In this document: one piece after another, positions 16,880-42,626 of the stretch | Numbering within the stretch: position 1 is the stretch's first letter | Layout: each line of letters opens with the position of its first letter | From: Trichosphaerium sp. ATCC 40318 | Lineage: Eukaryota; Protista; Tubulinea | Assembly: GCA_038496445.1 (NCBI GenBank) | Contig: JALMLS010000378.1 | Coordinates: forward strand, 62,001-126,000 | Length of the DNA stretch: 64,000 nucleotides | Direction of reading: 5' to 3' | Program-made: the position numbers and the translations under genes | The notes under the pieces: model-generated | What the model saw: only the letters and a program-made list of their open reading frames with translations | Told to the model about the DNA's origin: nothing | The model's database searches: none

Positions 16880-19580
16880 TTACGCTTTGAACTGTTGAAA
16901 ATATCCTTGAAAAATCATGTAGCTACACTTTTTACAAAACAAACTTTTCCCAAACTATTCTAAGTAAAGCCGTGTTGACTTGTAAGATGCTGATCGGTAT
17001 CGATAGTATATTGAACGTCCGTAGTATTCAGCGCGCAAAGCAAAACCTCATACCCGTACCTCATCGTGAACCTCACTATTTAGAAAAACGTGGGTAACAA
17101 AAGGTCTATCTTTTCGTCTTGAGCATAAATGATGCTAGATACAACGTCTTACGAATACCCATAGCCATGGGGCGCGGAATAATCAATGCGAGTGTTTTTT
17201 CGTGGACTAGCGAGCGCCTTTACGTTTACATTAAAAAAGTTGTTCACACGTGCACACTTTATTTTTGAAGTGTCCACGAGCTTCTTTACTGTCTTAATCT
17301 CAATATTCCACGCTGTACACCCGAGTACTTGAATATATCGTGAAGAATGAGCGAGTTCGCGCGTGTCGTGAAGAGTAATATTTACTAACACAAAATAACA
17401 TGTTCTAGTGCTAGCTGGAGCGTTTGTGCTTTTGTGGAGATACACGGCTTCGCGATTGTTGTCAACCGTTTTTTTGTGATGTGATGTTACTTATTTTTTT
17501 TCAAGCGAGTAAGTTTGTCTTGCAATTGAACTCTTCGTTCATGCAGCAAGTTTTGAACAAGTTTTATTTTTTTCAGTGATTACTTTCGTGGTTTGTTTTT
17601 GGCCTCGACCAACACGACTACAACACGTTAAAACCACCAAGTTTTGATAGGCAAACTCTTTAGCCAGTCAATAAAACAAATATCAACAATACAAACATAA
17701 CAAACAACAAACAAACTTACAAACTGTTTCCTCAAATGATAAACACTTCGAAACTCTTAGTACGACATTCACTTTTTGTCAAATAAGCCTGCTCTAACAT
17801 AGTGCAATTCGTAGATACTGATATCAATGATTGTATGTGTGACCAATGCGTATGTCGTTCTATCAACTGAAATGTCAGCGACAGATGCACAAGCTGCTTG
17901 TCAAAGTACTCATGGCACAGATCTAGCAACAATCACTTCTCAACAAGACCACGATGATGCCATTGATGCCTGTAATGCCCTTGGCCTTGGTGAGCAATGT
18001 TGGATTGGCGCTACTGATGCCCTTGATGAAGGTACTGCGTTTAAGCAAATACTCCATCATAGCAAGGTCTCACTTTTTAATTGCAGACATATTCCTTTGG
18101 AGAGATGGAAGTGCTGTAGACTACAACCGATTCATGTCTTTGATTGTCACCAGGAATAGTGCTGGAAGAAACTGTGTTGCACTCTCAACCCTTTTTTCTG
18201 GATGGTTCTACGAAACATGTGACGCCTTCAGATACGCTGTTTGCAACGAACCTGTCACTGCAGCCCCTACCGACGCGCCTACAATGGCTCCATCAACCTA
18301 TGTTACCCTCAGCTCTACTTATGACGCTGTCTACGGACAAGATGCATGCCAATCTATCTACGGAACAGACATGGCCAAAATTACAAACGCAGCAGACAAC
18401 GCAGCTGTACAACAAGCTTGTGCTGATGCTGGAGCATCGCAATGTTGGATTGGCGCAAACGAAATTGCCAATGAAGGTACCTTAGAACGTCTTTCATGTG
18501 GCACCTCGTAAGTTCTTACTCTTTTATAGGTACTCTCGTATGGCATGATGGCTCTGCAGTGACATACACCAACTTTGATTCATCAAACAACAACGATCCT
18601 ATTGTCGATTGTGTTAGTATCTTTGCAAGTGGCACCGATGCTGGTAAATGGAGATACAATATCTGCGAAGAAGGTGTCAGACAAACTGTAGTATGCAACG
18701 CTCCTGAAACTGCATCATACGTTGCTGGTGGAATTTACGATGCCTCACTTGGTCAAGATGAATGCCAATCTATGTATGGCACAGATCTCGCCAAGATTCT
18801 AACTGAAGCTGACAATATCGCTGCACAAACAGCATGTGCTGATGCTGGAGCCTCACAATGTTGGATTGGTGCAAACGAAATAGCACTTGAAGGTATGTAT
18901 CCACTACTTTTTGAAAGCAATAGCTCTAACTTTGTTGATAAAGGTACTCTTGTATGGCATGACGGCTCTTCTGTTGAGTACACCAACTTTGATTCATCAA
19001 ACAACAATGACCCTATCGTTGATTGTGTAAGTATCTTTGCAAGTGGTACCGATGCTGGTAAATGGAGATATGACATATGCGAAGAAGGTGTCAGGCAGAC
19101 GATCCTTTGCAATGCTCCTGTTGTGCACTCATATGTGACACTTTCTTCAACATATGATGCTTCACTTGGACAAGATGCATGCCAATCTACCTACGGAACA
19201 GACATGGCCAAGATTACAAACGCAGCAGACAACGCAGCTGTACAACAAGCTTGTGCTGATGCTGGCGCTTCTCAATGTTGGATTGGTGCAAACGAAATTG
19301 CCAATGAAGGTACGTTCGATTTGTAGTACTTTGAGGTAACTCTAAAGTCTTACTCTACTAATAGGTACTCTCGTATGGCATGACGGATCTGCAGTGACAT
19401 ACACCAACTTTGATTCATCAAACAACAACGATCCTATTGTCGATTGTGTGAGTATCTTTGCAAGTGGCACCGATGCTGGTAAATGGAGATACGATATCTG
19501 TGAAGAAGGTGTCAGACAAACTGTCGTTTGTAATGCTCCTTAAACAAACACCATGTGCTTAATAAACAAGCTTTACACTC
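16880..19580 (+). repeat. Left arm of inverted segmental duplication (partner about 44960-47640)
   Basis: Near-identical reverse complement from about 17170-19580; weaker similarity outward to about 16880. Confidence 0.9.
17736..19543 (+). CDS. Secreted protein with four C-type lectin-like domains (copy A)
   Basis: Signal MINTSKLL|ILISMIVCVTNA; four units of AQAAC..DLATIT..CWIGA..EG|TLVWHDGS..Y.NF..DCV..W....C.....VCN, each with an intron at the same position. Confidence 0.9.
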
Positions 19581-19774: not shown

Positions 19775-22700
19775 TTATGACGATCCACGATGAAGCCTGA
19801 AAAGATCAAACCCTGTTTGATCACTTGTTGCTCTAACTGGTCTGCATCCATTACAGCAAGCGTTCTTTCTAATACACCAACATTTGTATGGCATTCCACC
19901 ACTGTATAGTAGATGTGGGAGTTCGCGAGTGTAGATTGCATCAGAACACTGTGGGTCTCTTGCTGCTGCAACGGCACATTCATTGGCAAAGAGATGCTGG
20001 CTCCATTGCTCGGCACGTCCTCGCATAAATACTTGTTTCTTACAATCCTTCCACGTTTGTCCAGCACAAGTATGGTGTCTTCTTCCTTGGCCAAGGTCTG
20101 CATAATTAAAGTGACCATCACAGTAACTGTCAGCCTGCCTAAAGACGAGCCTAGGAGGATCGAATGCAGGTGTATCCGTTTTTGGTTCAAAATCACAGTT
20201 TCTACAGTCGCTTGTCATTCGCCATTTTGGTTGACGTGTAACGTTTTTGTTAAGATTTGCGTCATCACAAGTTATGCATTCGTCTCCGTGTCTCCATGGG
20301 ATATCTTGATGTTGAGGAGGAGGAACAAATCCTGAGAATAGACGACCTGCGCCCTTGTACCAACATGTCGAGTTGTAAGCTGGGTCTCCTGGGTGTGTAA
20401 CTTCTTCTGGGCCAAAAGTTTCGGTAGCTCTTCGCGCACGGACGGTGTAACACATATCTACACGATCCCATGGTTCTCCAAGATTTGTCACGATGTCTTT
20501 GCATATTTGAGGAATGAGATTTGCTTGTCCGTTGTATCTGTTTGGTTGAAGTCCTCTAGGCAAGACCATGTATCCTGTACATCCACCGCGTATCTCACAA
20601 TCTCTTTCACAAATATTGCCGTCATTGTAGATTCTATGGCATGCTAAATATGCTGTTAGAGGAAGGAATCAAGACAAACAAATCAAAAACTAAAGCTTAC
20701 TAAATATTCTCTCTGGTTTAGGGAAGAAGCAATGATCAATACGACTAAAGAAACAAAGTCAGAACACAAACCGAAAAGAAAAGAAAAATTACGCACGTGT
20801 ATCCTCCAGCAGGGTTCGCAAGACCATAGATGTCTCTAACTTGTCTGTTCACATAGTTAACATCAATACAATCTCTGTAACCTCTCCATTGCCATTGAAT
20901 AACATAGTCTCCAAAGAAGAACCAGATGGTATCGCAAGTCTTACCATATCAGCATCTTGTGGTCTGTGTGCGAAATGATCAAACTTGAAGATACCAAGAA
21001 CAAAGTCAAGCTTGGAGTTAGTGTATTCACAATAATTTCTGACTTCAAGATTGTTCTTGTATCCGAATAATGTGGCGTCATCTCTCCATAGACCAAAAGC
21101 TTCAGGTCGGGGTATGTAGTTCGGAGAAGATTTAGGGATTGCTCCACTGTAGAATTGAAGGAAAGGGTTGAAGCCAGCATCTCTAGCTTTGAACTGTCTG
21201 TGGTACACAGGCAAGTTTCGACATGCACTGTTTGGTGCTTCTCTCATGTACGTGTCCATGAGATCAAAAGATACCTCGTTGAGTCTCACTTCATCTTCAA
21301 GCTTGAGGATAACGTAGTATGAAGGTTGAGTATGACCAACTGCCCATTCGATTTCAAATTGTTGATTTGGACCGACTTGAACATGAGGAGCAGCTTGTCT
21401 TCTTGAAGGACATGGTGTTTGGGTACTAGCGATATCTGAACTTCTGCCAATTCCGAATTGCCAGTTGTGAGCTTGAGTGGTAGGGAACGAAACCAAAGCG
21501 ATAAGGAAGAGAGACAAGACAACAGAAGTTGTCATCTTTCCAGATGAGCGCATTGTCAAGCCAAGGATAGCAAGAGCCATGAAGAGGAAGGAAGTTGTTG
21601 ATTTTGTACCACTCGATGTGGCGCCTCTCGCAGCAATTACAGTTCTACCAGGGTTGGCTGGTGGAAGAGTGTTGGCAAGACATTTACACATACGAAGTCT
21701 ACACAAAAAACAAAACGTAAGTAAAGAGTCGAAAAAGCAAAGTAAAAAACAAACAGTTTGATGTTGATATTCGTACCCGATTCTGGTATCACCACTTCTA
21801 GCATCACAAGTAACTCTATTTCCATTACGTCTTTGTTGTTGGCATCTGGTATCATCATAGTAGCAAAGGCCATCAGTACCCATAGTCGCTCCTTTGGTGC
21901 CACATCCGCTTACATATGGAAGTTTGCAAGGGAAGCTTTGTGGAATGATGAGTTGTTCAATTCTTGTTGGACTGTTAACACGCTCCATATGGACAACATC
22001 ACATTGTAGATTCTCTTCAGCACATCTAGCGGTACAAGATTGACCTCTCTACAAAGAATTGTTTAGTCAATGACTTTCATACTACCAATAAAACAAGAAT
22101 TGTTTTTACCTCGGATTGAAACCATGTTTGACGTGGTTTACTTCTGGTTGATTGAGTGAGTTTGAGCGGTCCCCTGCCACCATTATTTGGCCAATAAAAA
22201 GCGCCAGTATTAGCGTCACCTTGTTTAATCAAACAATGAAACGTTACTGGTCCTGTTCCTCTTGGTGGAGCCTTCCACTTCCATGTTGACTTAAGAGGCT
22301 TGAGTTCAGCGCTGTTATGTGTGATACTTTGGCGACATGAGTGTGAATTAGGCCAAGGTAATTGAAAAAAAGCTACAAGACAAGTCAACAGGTGAAACTA
22401 CGAAAAGCAAAGAAAACAAAGGCAGAAAAATTCGCCATGAAAAAAAAAGAAAAAGAACTTTTGCGTAGTTTGGAAAACATTTATATTTAGAAATGATTGG
22501 TTTTTTCCAGGTTTGTATACAACGTACGGTTCTTTTCATCTGGTAGAAGCCATTCTCCAACTCTGTTTCCATTATTGTCTTGGGCATAGATGAGAATACC
22601 GCGGTATTTGAAATCATAGTTGTTAACACGAATGCTAATGTCCATCACTGTTTCTGGAATGTATTGGGACTCTTGAGCGTCTTCTGCACCAGCCCAAGTA

Positions 22701-22939
22701 CTGTAGGCGTTGTGTCGAACGACCTTAGTTGCCCATGACATACGAGGTTCTGGTCTTTTTCTACAGGTTAGTCTGTCGACTACACCGTTTCCGAATACTC
22801 TGTAATCAGCAGGAGGACATCCCCAGTCAGGAGAAGCAGCATCACAGTTTGGTACAGACGCTGTAGGTCTTGAAGCACCATATACGGACGCAATAAGAGC
22901 AATCAAACAAAGCGAGGCCAAGATAGAGGCACCACGCAT
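19775..22939 (-). CDS. Secreted Reeler-domain / LPMO-like His-brace putative polyprotein with Cys-rich C-terminus (1-nt frameshift at about 20913)
   Basis: Signal MRGASILASLCLIALIASVYG; Reeler-like YRGILIYAQD..VGEW..C..THNSA..WKAP..GTGPVTF; double hydrophobic segment, then TQA|HNW..GH..YVIQWQWRGYRDCIDV; Cys-rich tail. Confidence 0.6.
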
Positions 22940-41000: not shown

Positions 41001-42255
41001 TATTCGTATGCTTCCACTAGACAAAAAATCAATTTTGCTTTTAACCAAGTAATTTTTTGCAATAAAAAAATTGTGGTTTGCTACAGTTTTCTTAAAAACC
41101 GTTCCAATGTGTTGTACGCACTCATCTAAGCACATTGTTATGAATTTATAGTATATATACGGATTTCGATGTTGGGTTTTGAGATGTAGAGTTATGAAGT
41201 AAATCGGGATTGTCTTTTTGAGAAACAAATGTGAAAAAATGTGAAATTCGAAAAAAGACGTAAATGCAACTTACACTGGTTTATGCGTTTCCGTGTGGTG
41301 TCTTCCAGGCGTATTATGATACTCATCTATATTTACAATCGACAGTAATTCACTAAAAATCCTAAGAGCTCAGAATTTGTGCGATCAACCTGTAGTAACT
41401 TGAGGTATGTTATTAGCGTAGAGTAAGATGTTTCCGAGTTGTTTTGATCCAAAAAAGCTTGATCTTTCTGTTATCACTTCCCTAAAGCGCTTATCGCTCA
41501 AAACATGCCTGCATTTTATAACATAAATGAAATATAGCGTTGGTGACGCTTTGAATCAGATACTTGCTTTTTCGGTTTCAAAAAACGTGATCGTACCGTT
41601 AATAATTTCTTTCAGCTTTGCTCCGGGGAAAAGCGTTTATGTACTATGAGAGATGGTTTCCTCGCTTTGACACCCTTGTTGGCAAGCTTGTTGTTTGGTT
41701 TCAACCAGCATTTCTTTTTTTTTACCTCAAAAACCGCTATCATTATTCGCAACGCGTACCATAATGTATTCATGATGCTTTGAAGATCTTTTTAGCTGGT
41801 TTTGCACCAACTAAAGCGATCTTGCTTGGAAACTCTTAAGCATGGTTTGTTCGCGTTATGAGCACAGATACAGGTAGAGAACGCAAACAATACGAAAGTG
41901 AAAAAAGTAAAAGTTATCACGCTTAAACTCTTTCAAAAAATGTCACACGTTTCTTCATCTCCATGCCGTAAAGAGTGTTGACTTCGAATTCATACTTCCA
42001 TTGAGCGAGTAATTCCTTGCTGAAGATTAATTCAACTTGAATTTCGCTATCTTCTTCCTCAGGTAAAACGTTAGCACCACTACTTGCTTGTACCTTATTT
42101 CCGTTGCGCCTGCATCTGCGCTGTTGTGAGGTCTGGGGTTTTCTTGTCAAAGTTGGGAGGAAGTATGCTGATCATCTTGAGGAAATAGTCGACTATTTCC
42201 AACTTTTTACGTTCTGGCGATAGATTCGGTATTCTATTCGTTTGGAACATCGCTA

Positions 42256-42380
42256 GGTGGAGTGCCATACAAATGCTGGTGTATTACAAACAAGGCTTGT
42301 TGCACTGGATGTAAACCAAAAGCAGCCGCACGCAATCACCAGGCTTTGATATTCATTCCCTTCATCGTGGATTGTCATAA
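42256..42380 (+). pseudogene. Inverted relic of the 3' end of the Reeler/LPMO-like gene
   Basis: GGVPYKCWCITNKACCTGCKP..GFDIHSLHRGLS* versus GGMPYKCWCIRKNACCNGCRP..GFDLFRLHRGSS* at 19775-19900; contains a frameshift. Confidence 0.85.
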
Positions 42381-42626
42381 ACATTTCAAGACTTCTAGCA
42401 ATGAACACTTCAATAAAGCATTCTAATCACATCATTATTTTTTTAACGTGATCATCACGTGCGATACAAGTTATTTTTAACCAGGTTTTCTTTTTTCTAC
42501 ATACTTTTGTATATCACTGTTGGTATTGAATCACATGTTATAATCGACGAAACAGCTGTTCAAGTTGACCACCATTGACAACTACTCAACCAATTTCTTA
42601 CTTCACTGTACAGCGTTCACACTCTC

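What the first reader, a model, noticed from the sequence alone, without database searches (positions are those of the whole stretch)
19775..22939. Putative signal-peptidase-processed polyprotein: Reeler domain plus an LPMO-like His-brace enzyme released by an internal signal peptide
Seen: one reading frame runs signal peptide > Reeler-like domain > Cys-rich module > S/G/T spacer (TSSGTKSTTS) > hydrophobic helix FLFMALAILGLTM > short basic loop RSSGK > second helix MTTSVVLSLFLIALVSFPTTQA > HNWQFGIGRS. There is no stop between the halves. Established: lytic polysaccharide monooxygenases need His as residue 1, produced by signal peptidase, so they normally sit at the N-terminus of the precursor. 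Inference: the first helix is a GPI-signal or stop-transfer and the second is an internal signal peptide cleaved at TQA|H, as in viral polyproteins. This would yield a membrane-anchored Reeler protein and a free His1 copper protein at 1:1 from one mRNA, a way to place an LPMO-type domain downstream in a fusion.
Basis: partly seen in the sequence, partly recalled or inferred. Interest (0 to 1): 0.9.

Follow-up and report, generated by a model that had tools for sequence, protein, structure and literature searches.

The report
Internal signal peptide before LPMO-like histidine
One spliced amoeba gene encodes a Reeler-domain surface protein, a two-helix membrane hairpin and an undescribed LPMO-like domain whose invariant first histidine follows a mid-protein signal-peptidase site, so cutting there would free the N-terminal histidine that copper "histidine-brace" proteins need; about ninety distant protist relatives share the layout, but this copy has a one-base frame break.

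Summary
They are not one raw reading frame. The junction itself lies in one exon with no stop: GPI-like spacer, helix FLFMALAILGLTM, loop RSSGK, helix ending TQA, then His.

An exhaustive HMMER search found 283 relatives. Of 139 with the HNW motif, 91 carry it internally. Position -1 is A/G/S in 90 of those 91 and position -3 is small in all 91. The loop is positively charged, and there is no conserved Met to restart translation. Trinity/MMETSP transcripts of Flabellula, Rhizamoeba and two other protists encode the whole precursor in one ORF.

The HNW domain matches no Pfam, NCBIfam or PDB sequence. A confident AlphaFold model resembles LPMO and LPMO-like structures only moderately (Z 5.4-7.5). 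H1, H46 and Y204 are invariant or nearly so.

Signal-peptidase cleavage, copper binding and GPI anchoring are inferred, not shown. No RNA run was listed for this genome. I found no description in the literature searched. The scan has already noted the same layout on at least eight other pieces of this genome.

The parts
22877..22939 (-). Start codon and N-terminal signal peptide MRGASILASLCLIALIASVYG
   Evidence: aligns with the N-termini of P0001 and P0007
22528..22876 (-). Exon 1 remainder: N-terminal half of the Reeler domain
   Evidence: Pfam Reeler E 0.012, sub-threshold; tblastn collinear with P0001, P0005 and P0007
22373..22527 (-). Intron 1 (155 nt, GTACGT..TGTAG)
22110..22372 (-). Exon 2: C-terminal half of the Reeler domain (..ITHNSAELKP..APPRGTGPVTF..LIKQGDANTGAFYWP)
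   Evidence: tblastn 46-48% identity to P0001 and P0002. Homologues pass the Pfam Reeler threshold. The model of P0001:1-336 matches the F-spondin reeler domain, Foldseek E 6.7e-10 and VIA Z 11.8
22049..22109 (-). Intron 2 (61 nt)
21777..22048 (-). Exon 3: Cys-rich module, resembling the C-terminal domain of MGAT5
   Evidence: Pfam Glyco_transf_18 E 0.035 at profile positions 477-509; 4 homologues down to E 1.2e-05; model residues 208-324 against MGAT5 636-741, Z 10.3
21699..21776 (-). Intron 3 (78 nt, in frame, no stop; GTACGA..GTGTAG). It makes the ORF look continuous.
   Evidence: Spliced, the sequence fits the family pattern C..R.C.C
21626..21698 (-). Start of exon 4: end of the Cys module (LRMCKC..) and linker
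21590..21625 (-). Ser/Gly/Thr spacer GATSSGTKSTTS with omega-like triplets (SSG, ATS)
21551..21589 (-). Hydrophobic helix 1, FLFMALAILGLTM (GPI-signal tail or stop-transfer)
21536..21550 (-). Short basic loop RSSGK (net charge +2; predicted cytosolic)
21470..21535 (-). Helix 2 = internal signal peptide MTTSVVLSLFLIALVSFPTTQA; predicted signal-peptidase site after TQA
21467..21469 (-). Invariant His (H1 of the HNW domain)
20915..21466 (-). HNW (LPMO-like) domain, first part, including EIEWAVGH (second invariant His) and ..AIPSGSS
   Evidence: phmmer: 283 hits, best E 1.7e-22; alignment A1; model and fold search
20913..20914 (-). Frame break: two bases (TT) where a codon is expected, in the run TCTTCTTTGG
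   Evidence: homologues are collinear across it
20797..20912 (-). HNW domain, last strands, in the other frame: GDYVIQWQWRGYRDCIDV.. (near-invariant Tyr and Cys)
20745..20796 (-). Intron 4 (52 nt)
20701..20744 (-). 44-nt mini-exon encoding RIDHCFFPKPERIF (family motif R.DHC)
20653..20700 (-). Intron 5 (48 nt)
19775..20652 (-). Last exon: Cys-rich tail shared with the family, then the stop codon at 19777-19775. An AATAAA follows.
   Evidence: No Pfam family

Best explanation
The locus is one spliced gene for a secretory precursor of about 923 residues. It belongs to a widespread but undescribed protist family.

Proposed steps (all inferred from sequence logic and family conservation):
1. The N-terminal signal peptide takes the Reeler domain and the MGAT5-C-terminal-like Cys module into the ER lumen.
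2. Helix 1 halts translocation. The short basic loop stays on the cytosolic side.
3. Helix 2 re-initiates translocation as an internal signal peptide.
4. Signal peptidase cuts after TQA. The downstream HNW domain then begins with a free histidine, the residue that histidine-brace copper sites (LPMOs, X325/Bim1, CopC/YcnI) require.

The result is two proteins at 1:1 from one mRNA. One is a membrane-held Reeler protein. It is held either by the remaining hairpin or, after transamidase cleavage at the Ser/Gly-rich omega-like site, by a GPI anchor. The other is a soluble product of about 560 residues: the LPMO-like domain plus a Cys-rich tail.

The hairpin reads like the fused remains of an upstream gene's GPI signal and a downstream gene's signal peptide (n-region = basic loop).

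The partner modules seen in the family (Reeler, DOMON, cupredoxin) suggest a redox or metal hand-over partner. That last point is speculation.

This particular copy has a one-base shortfall in the domain. It is either an assembly homopolymer error or a very recent pseudogene.
For: Shown:
- Gene model with canonical splice sites, collinear with homologues over residues 5-893 of P0001.
- The junction is uninterrupted in one exon.
- 283 relatives at E<=1e-3. 91 of 139 HNW-bearing hits have the domain internal.
- Position -1 is A/G/S in 90 of 91 and -3 is A/V/T/S/C/G in 91 of 91. This is indistinguishable from the 48 N-terminal cases.
- 72 of 91 show two hydrophobic cores. Loop charge is >0 in 56, 0 in 15 and <0 in 1.
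- A Met at the start of helix 2 occurs in only 14 of 72.
- An omega-like triplet lies upstream of helix 1 in 58 of 64, against 52% at control positions.
- Full precursors come from transcript assemblies: Flabellula baltica and Rhizamoeba saxonica (Trinity), MMETSP0206, Lotharella globosa, and contigs barely longer than the ORF.
- H1, N2, W3, R9, C19, H46 and Y76 are invariant. H29, Y204 and C207 are near-invariant.
- The AF2 model has pLDDT 88.9. Its best structural neighbours include LaX325 (Z 7.5), AA15 (7.0), AA13 (6.1), AA9, AA11, AA16 and AA10 (5.6-5.8). Model residue 1 aligns to chain residue 1.
- An internal GPI signal can be processed (Caras 1991, PMC2288913).
Against: - There is no direct evidence of cleavage, copper binding, GPI attachment or activity.
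- No RNA run was listed for this genome, so this gene's own transcript is unverified.
- The fold match to LPMOs is middling. It is mixed with pilins, p53 core and other beta-sandwiches at similar Z, and Foldseek gave nothing at E<=1e-3.
- There is no sequence membership in any LPMO Pfam family. AA9 appears faintly in 2 of 70.
- I could not inspect model coordinates, so the spatial proximity of H1, H46 and Y204 is untested.
- Helices 1 and 2 are short (13 and about 17 hydrophobic residues). Real topology could differ.
- This copy has a frame break.
Confidence: 0.62

Rival explanations
1. Uncleaved hairpin protein. Helices 1 and 2 form a permanent two-helix membrane anchor, and both ectodomains stay on one chain. 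The His is then not N-terminal, and the HNW domain is a non-copper binding or adhesion module.
For: Cleavage is not demonstrated. The fold match to LPMOs is only moderate and is shared with adhesin-type beta-sandwiches. The topology (both domains lumenal) is the same with or without cleavage.
Against: An uncleaved helix end would not need A/G/S at -1 in 90 of 91 or a small residue at -3 in 91 of 91, followed by an invariant His. The same motif follows ordinary N-terminal signal peptides in family members scattered through the tree, and there cleavage is the default expectation.
Confidence: 0.17
2. Two adjacent genes, or an internal promoter or start. The LPMO-like half is made from its own transcript, starting at the Met of MTTSVV, and the open junction is incidental.
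For: In this copy helix 2 does begin with Met. No RNA data exist for this genome. N-terminal-type family members exist.
Against: Continuous ORFs across the junction occur in 91 relatives, including de novo transcript assemblies of named species. A Met at that position occurs in only 14 of 72. There is no stop, no intergenic spacer and no intron in the junction exon.
Confidence: 0.06
3. This copy is a dead pseudogene. The frame break at 20914-20913 is real, so the locus makes at most a truncated product lacking the last strands (including the near-invariant Tyr and Cys) and the tail.
For: The one-base shortfall sits in the assembled sequence. A frameshifted fragment of a paralogous 3' end lies at 42205-42400, so decay of family members occurs in this genome. 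The domain sits on a long branch in the tree (1.55).
Against: About 340 codons, three splice junctions and a 44-nt mini-exon downstream of the break are all intact and family-like. That fits an assembly error in the run TCTTCTTTGG, or a very recent lesion. This rival concerns only this copy, not the mechanism.
Confidence: 0.4

Closest known systems
LPMOs (CAZy AA9-AA17) and the LPMO-like copper protein X325/Bim1
   Same: A secreted beta-sandwich whose first mature residue is a His produced by signal-peptidase cleavage. A second conserved His and a conserved Tyr sit on a late strand. X325 proteins are GPI-linked copper binders (own knowledge). The best structural neighbours of the model are LaX325 (6ibh, Z 7.5) and AA15 (5msz, Z 7.0).
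   Different: No detectable sequence similarity to any of them. The fold scores are only middling. The domain usually sits 300-900 residues into the precursor, behind a second signal peptide. It carries its own conserved Cys-rich tail.
Viral envelope polyproteins cut by host signal peptidase (flavivirus prM/E, pestivirus/hepacivirus E1/E2/p7, bunyavirus Gn/Gc)
   Same: A transmembrane segment, a short cytosolic loop, an internal signal sequence, and cleavage at a small-x-small site in the ER lumen. Several proteins come from one ORF (own knowledge; PMC7926653 and PMC5636883, listed).
   Different: This is a cellular multi-copy gene family of free-living protists. The cut is placed so as to create a functional N-terminal residue, not only to separate chains.
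DAF-hGH chimera with an internal GPI signal (Caras 1991, PMC2288913)
   Same: A GPI signal in mid-chain, followed by a further secretory domain, was still processed to give a GPI-anchored N-terminal product.
   Different: That was an engineered construct. Here the arrangement is natural and conserved, and GPI attachment is only inferred.
Reeler/DOMON redox-associated ectodomains (FRRS1/SDR2; cytochrome domain of cellobiose dehydrogenase as LPMO reductant)
   Same: The partner modules upstream of the hairpin are Reeler (25 of 82), DOMON (2) and cupredoxin (1). The Reeler-module model also resembles cytochrome f (Z 8.8) and YcnI (Z 7.9).
   Different: No cytochrome b561 or flavin domain is present. 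No cofactor ligand has been identified. The redox link rests on own knowledge plus speculation.

Membership tests
LPMO / LPMO-like histidine-brace proteins | His is residue 1 of the mature chain, directly after a signal-peptidase site | tested here: met
   TQA|H in the window. H is invariant. -1 is A/G/S in 90 of 91 and -3 is small in 91 of 91. Actual cleavage was not shown.
LPMO / LPMO-like histidine-brace proteins | A second copper-ligand His and an axial Tyr/Phe, close to His1 in space | tested here: inconclusive
   H46 is invariant; H29 and Y204 are near-invariant. They sit at a strand end and on the last strand of the model.
LPMO / LPMO-like histidine-brace proteins | Sequence match to a CAZy AA family model (PF03443 AA9, PF03067 LPMO_10, BIM1-like and others) | tested here: not met
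   No Pfam, NCBIfam or PDB-sequence hit. AA9 appears only faintly, in 2 of 70 at E 0.031.
LPMO / LPMO-like histidine-brace proteins | LPMO-type immunoglobulin-like beta-sandwich fold | tested here: inconclusive
   VIA-align Z 5.4-7.5 to X325, AA15, AA13, AA9, AA11, AA16 and AA10, with residue 1 aligned to residue 1. Unrelated sandwiches score alike. Foldseek gave nothing at E<=1e-3. Atlas TM 0.36-0.40 to LPMO_10 and BIM1-like clusters.
LPMO / LPMO-like histidine-brace proteins | Copper binding and oxidative cleavage of a polysaccharide | not testable with these tools
   Needs protein with a native N-terminus, EPR or ICP-MS, and activity assays.
Reeler domain (PF02014) | Match to the Pfam model above its gathering score, or the Reeler fold | tested here: met
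   The window's exon 1 alone scores 16.6 bits against a cut-off of 21. Collinear homologues P0003 and P0005 score 36.3 and 34.9 bits, and 25 of 82 match. The model of P0001:1-336 matches the F-spondin reeler domain, Foldseek E 6.7e-10, Z 11.8.
GPI-anchored protein (N-terminal product) | N-terminal signal peptide, then a small-residue omega site, a polar spacer and a hydrophobic tail | tested here: met
   SSG or ATS lies 7-9 residues before the 13-residue helix 1. An omega-like triplet occurs in 58 of 64 relatives against 52% at control positions. This was a rule-based check only; no NetGPI was available.
GPI-anchored protein (N-terminal product) | The hydrophobic tail lies at the C-terminus of the precursor | tested here: not met
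   About 560 residues follow helix 1. Only the internal-signal precedent of Caras 1991 makes anchoring plausible.
Signal-peptidase-processed polyprotein | An internal h-region with a c-region obeying the -3/-1 rule, oriented with the cleavage site in the lumen | tested here: met
   Helix 2 with FPTTQA. The loop before it is positively charged in 56 of 72 and negative in 1 of 72. The upstream domain is already lumenal through the first signal peptide.
Signal-peptidase-processed polyprotein | Two separate chains are demonstrated | not testable with these tools
   Needs expression and N-terminal sequencing.

The most novel reading that the evidence does not exclude
A cellular, conserved 'self-splitting' secretory precursor. 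Free-living protists use a second, internal signal peptide to manufacture the catalytic N-terminal histidine of a new copper histidine-brace family in mid-protein. In the same step they deposit a membrane-anchored Reeler, DOMON or cupredoxin partner next to it at 1:1. That partner may act as its electron donor or copper hand-over partner. The hairpin would be the fossil of a GPI signal fused to a signal peptide.
Probability: 0.45. Interest if true: 0.85.

Novelty: new variant of a known kind. Interest (0 to 1): 0.75.

Why it matters
LPMO-type copper sites need the alpha-amino group of His1, and this is usually taken to confine such domains to the N-terminus of a precursor. Here is a natural, widely conserved way round that rule. 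It is also a rare cellular counterpart of the signal-peptidase polyprotein strategy known from enveloped viruses.

The finding defines an uncatalogued family with invariant H, N, W, a second His and a Tyr. At least 283 clusters were found in Amoebozoa, Rhizaria and other protists. The consistent pairing with Reeler, DOMON or cupredoxin modules gives a testable hypothesis about extracellular redox partners.

For annotation, domain-position filters that require an N-terminal His would miss every internal member.

Tried and rejected
- RNA evidence: the look-up of sequencing runs listed no run, so read laying could not be used.
- The search for homologous proteins with the LPMO-like region and with the tail found nothing. 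The word index is too insensitive at about 30% identity. The exhaustive phmmer search succeeded.
- The search for related loci in genome contigs (bacteria and archaea only) found no relative.
- The protein-atlas feature search gave only weak leads at 0.76-0.78 (LPMO_10; SCE4755 polysaccharide monooxygenase). NCBIfam did not confirm them.
- I considered an intron to explain the frame change near 20915, with donors at TTT|GTTCTT or G|GTATCT. I rejected it. Every such intron deletes residues that are collinear with homologues (..FDxAxFxIPxxxGxGxY..), and the stretch has coding, not T-rich intron, composition.
- I considered further 3' exons for the PDPxC module that many homologues carry. None is open downstream, an AATAAA follows the stop, and the paralogous fragment at 42.2 kb ends the same way.
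- A search for stand-alone Reeler + Cys + GPI proteins gave only fragments or intron-broken calls. It was uninformative.
- A profile comparison against a real LPMO alignment was not possible, because no LPMO sequence was available by reference.
Full report
**1. What is in the sequence**

The window is eukaryotic: GC 34-43%, with short GT..AG introns. The feature is a gene on the minus strand. Three-frame translation, canonical splice sites and tblastn of five homologues gave this model:

| Exon | Coordinates |
|---|---|
| 1 | 22939-22528 |
| 2 | 22372-22110 |
| 3 | 22048-21777 |
| 4 | 21698-20915 |
| frame break | two orphan bases, 20914-20913 |
| 4 continued (other frame) | 20912-20797 |
| 5 (mini-exon) | 20744-20701 |
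| 6 | 20652-19775 (stop at 19777-19775) |

The introns are 155, 61, 78, 52 and 48 nt. The 78-nt intron is in frame and has no stop. That is why the mechanical ORF 21988-20849 looks continuous.

The protein is about 923 residues if the break is read as X. It is collinear with P0001 over that protein's residues 5-893.

The junction runs spacer GATSSGTKSTTS, helix FLFMALAILGLTM, loop RSSGK, helix MTTSVVLSLFLIALVSFPTTQA, then HNWQF. It lies wholly inside exon 4 with no stop.

**2. The frame break**

After ..PQDADMVRLAIPSGSS the next in-family sequence, GDYVIQWQWRGYRDCIDV.., is in another frame. Only TT lies between the two.

Homologues read P..FD.A.F.IP, then seven residues, then Y[IV]..W.W.GY.DC. 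The window matches this residue for residue if one base is missing from the run TCTTCTTTGG.

Everything downstream is intact: about 340 codons, two introns and a 44-nt mini-exon encoding the family motif R.DHC. I read this as an assembly homopolymer error or a very recent lesion. I could not decide between them, because no sequencing run was listed.

**3. Relatives**

Pfam, NCBIfam and PDB sequence searches do not recognise the domain after the junction. An exhaustive phmmer search of 1.84 billion representatives found 283 proteins at E<=1e-3 and 85 at E<=1e-10, with a best E of 1.7e-22.

In most long hits the match starts 300-900 residues into the protein and includes the hydrophobic segment. 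Reading eight of them showed the same complete architecture:
- signal peptide
- Reeler domain
- Cys module
- Ser-rich spacer
- helix
- short basic loop
- helix ending small-x-small
- HNW domain
- Cys-rich tail

Figures for the best hits:

| Measure | Result |
|---|---|
| Hits carrying the HNW motif | 139 |
| HNW internal (80 or more residues in) | 91 |
| HNW within 80 residues of the start | 48 (7 of 73 full-length domains have a single ordinary signal peptide) |
| Position -1 in internal cases | A 77, G 8, S 5, P 1 |
| Position -3 in internal cases | A/V/T/S/C/G in all 91 |
| Two hydrophobic cores detected | 72 of 91 |
| Median lengths | cores 15 and 15 residues, loop 6 |
| Loop net charge | positive 56, zero 15, negative 1 |
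| Met near the start of helix 2 | 14 of 72 |

The distribution at -1 and -3 is the same in the N-terminal cases. Because a Met is so rarely present at helix 2, independent translation of the second half cannot be the family's rule.

**4. Transcript evidence in relatives**

Several full precursors come from transcript assemblies:
- P0007 is a Trinity transcript ORF of Flabellula baltica.
- P0013 is a Trinity transcript ORF of Rhizamoeba saxonica. Both species are Amoebozoa.
- P0031 is an MMETSP0206 transcript marked complete.
- P0022 is a Lotharella globosa UniRef entry.

The contigs of P0001, P0002, P0003 and P0005 are only 50-500 nt longer than their ORFs. One mRNA therefore spans both halves in relatives. 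For the window's own gene this remains untested.

**5. What the halves are**

N-terminal half. Pfam finds Reeler in 25 of 82 upstream regions, DOMON in 2, cupredoxin in 1 and TSP1 in 1. An AF2 model of P0001:1-336 has pLDDT 90.9. It matches the F-spondin reeler domain, with Foldseek E 6.7e-10 and VIA Z 11.8. Its Cys module (residues 208-324) matches the C-terminal domain of MGAT5 at Z 10.3. This agrees with weak Pfam Glyco_transf_18 hits.

C-terminal half. A 70-sequence alignment has H1, N2, W3, R9, C19, H46 and Y76 invariant. H29, Y204, C207 and others are conserved in at least 90%. The AF2 model of P0007:400-653 has pLDDT 88.9 and is a beta-sandwich.

- Foldseek found nothing at E<=1e-3.
- The exhaustive VIA-align search put LaX325 first (Z 7.5).
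- It was followed by AA15 (7.0), AA13 (6.1), AA9, AA11 and AA16 (5.7-5.8) and AA10 (5.6).
- In these matches model residue 1 aligns to chain residue 1.
- Pilins, p53 core and other sandwiches score alike.
- Atlas neighbours include LPMO_10 and BIM1-like clusters at TM 0.36-0.40.

So 'LPMO-like' is a reasonable description of how the domain probably works: an N-terminal His, a second His, and a Tyr on a late strand. It fails sequence membership of every catalogued family, and its fold match is inconclusive.

The tails hold no known Pfam domain beyond occasional WW or PAN.

**6. Mechanism**

Everything in this section is inferred.

The first signal peptide puts the Reeler and Cys modules in the lumen. 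Helix 1 stops transfer, and the basic loop stays cytosolic (positive-inside rule). Helix 2 re-inserts, and signal peptidase cuts after TQA. This exposes His1 of the HNW domain, which has no downstream hydrophobic segment and would be secreted.

The N-terminal product keeps either the hairpin or a GPI anchor. The region before helix 1 is Ser-rich (2.4-fold). It carries an omega-like triplet 6-13 residues upstream in 58 of 64 relatives, against 52% at random positions. An internal GPI signal was shown to work in a DAF-hGH chimera (PMC2288913).

The hairpin looks like a GPI tail fused to a signal peptide whose n-region became the loop.

In a domain tree the N-terminal forms are scattered among the internal ones, needing at least 5-6 changes. 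The two states therefore interconvert, or some 'N-terminal' forms are 5'-truncated contigs.

**7. Known or new**

Full-text searches found nothing that describes this:
- LPMO with internal signal peptide
- LPMO with Reeler
- histidine brace with signal peptidase
- LPMO with amoeba
- LPMO with protists and new family

The closest known things are LPMO and X325 proteins, viral signal-peptidase polyproteins and the engineered internal GPI signal.

The scan's own notes record the same layout on at least eight other pieces of this genome. Those are unchecked AI notes. My tests here were independent and agree with them.

**8. Verdict**

The interpretation passed all the tests I could run. The mechanism is probable but unproven. 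This copy is a flawed exemplar of an interesting family.

Noticed in passing
window 42205-42400 (+): An isolated fragment resembling the last ~55 residues of this gene's Cys-rich tail (..PYKCWCI..ACC.GC.. and the same ..LHRG.S-stop ending). It is split over two frames. It is probably a decayed piece of a paralogue.
   Followed up: partly
window 17954-19326 (+): The neighbouring convergent gene has tandem repeats of a C-type-lectin-like unit (Pfam Lectin_C E 2.4e-07; repeated ..CWIGANEIA.EG.. blocks). It is broken over overlapping ORFs, probably by introns.
   Followed up: partly
window 21777-22048 and P0001:208-324: The Cys-rich module between Reeler and the hairpin matches the non-catalytic C-terminal domain of the Golgi enzyme MGAT5 (Z 10.3, 19% identity; weak Pfam Glyco_transf_18 hits). 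I did not expect this relationship.
   Followed up: partly
model of P0001:1-336: After F-spondin, the Reeler-module model resembles cytochrome f (Z 8.8 and 8.0) and the copper protein YcnI (Z 7.9). From my own knowledge, both use a signal-peptidase-made N-terminus as a metal ligand. No conserved N-terminal ligand was seen here.
   Followed up: no
P0006 (ENA contig), residues 13-39 and 258 onward: One relative has a plastocyanin/azurin-type cupredoxin instead of Reeler upstream of the same Cys module, hairpin and ATA|HNW junction. Two others have DOMON.
   Followed up: partly
L001:3870-3888: The Logan contig carrying P0005 ends in the Nextera adapter sequence CTGTCTCTTATACACATCT, so its 3' end is a library artefact, not genome or poly(A).
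   Followed up: no
window 21699-21776 (-): The 78-nt intron is in frame and stop-free. Unspliced, it would insert 26 mostly hydrophobic residues into the Cys module. ORF-based gene callers would read through it.
   Followed up: yes
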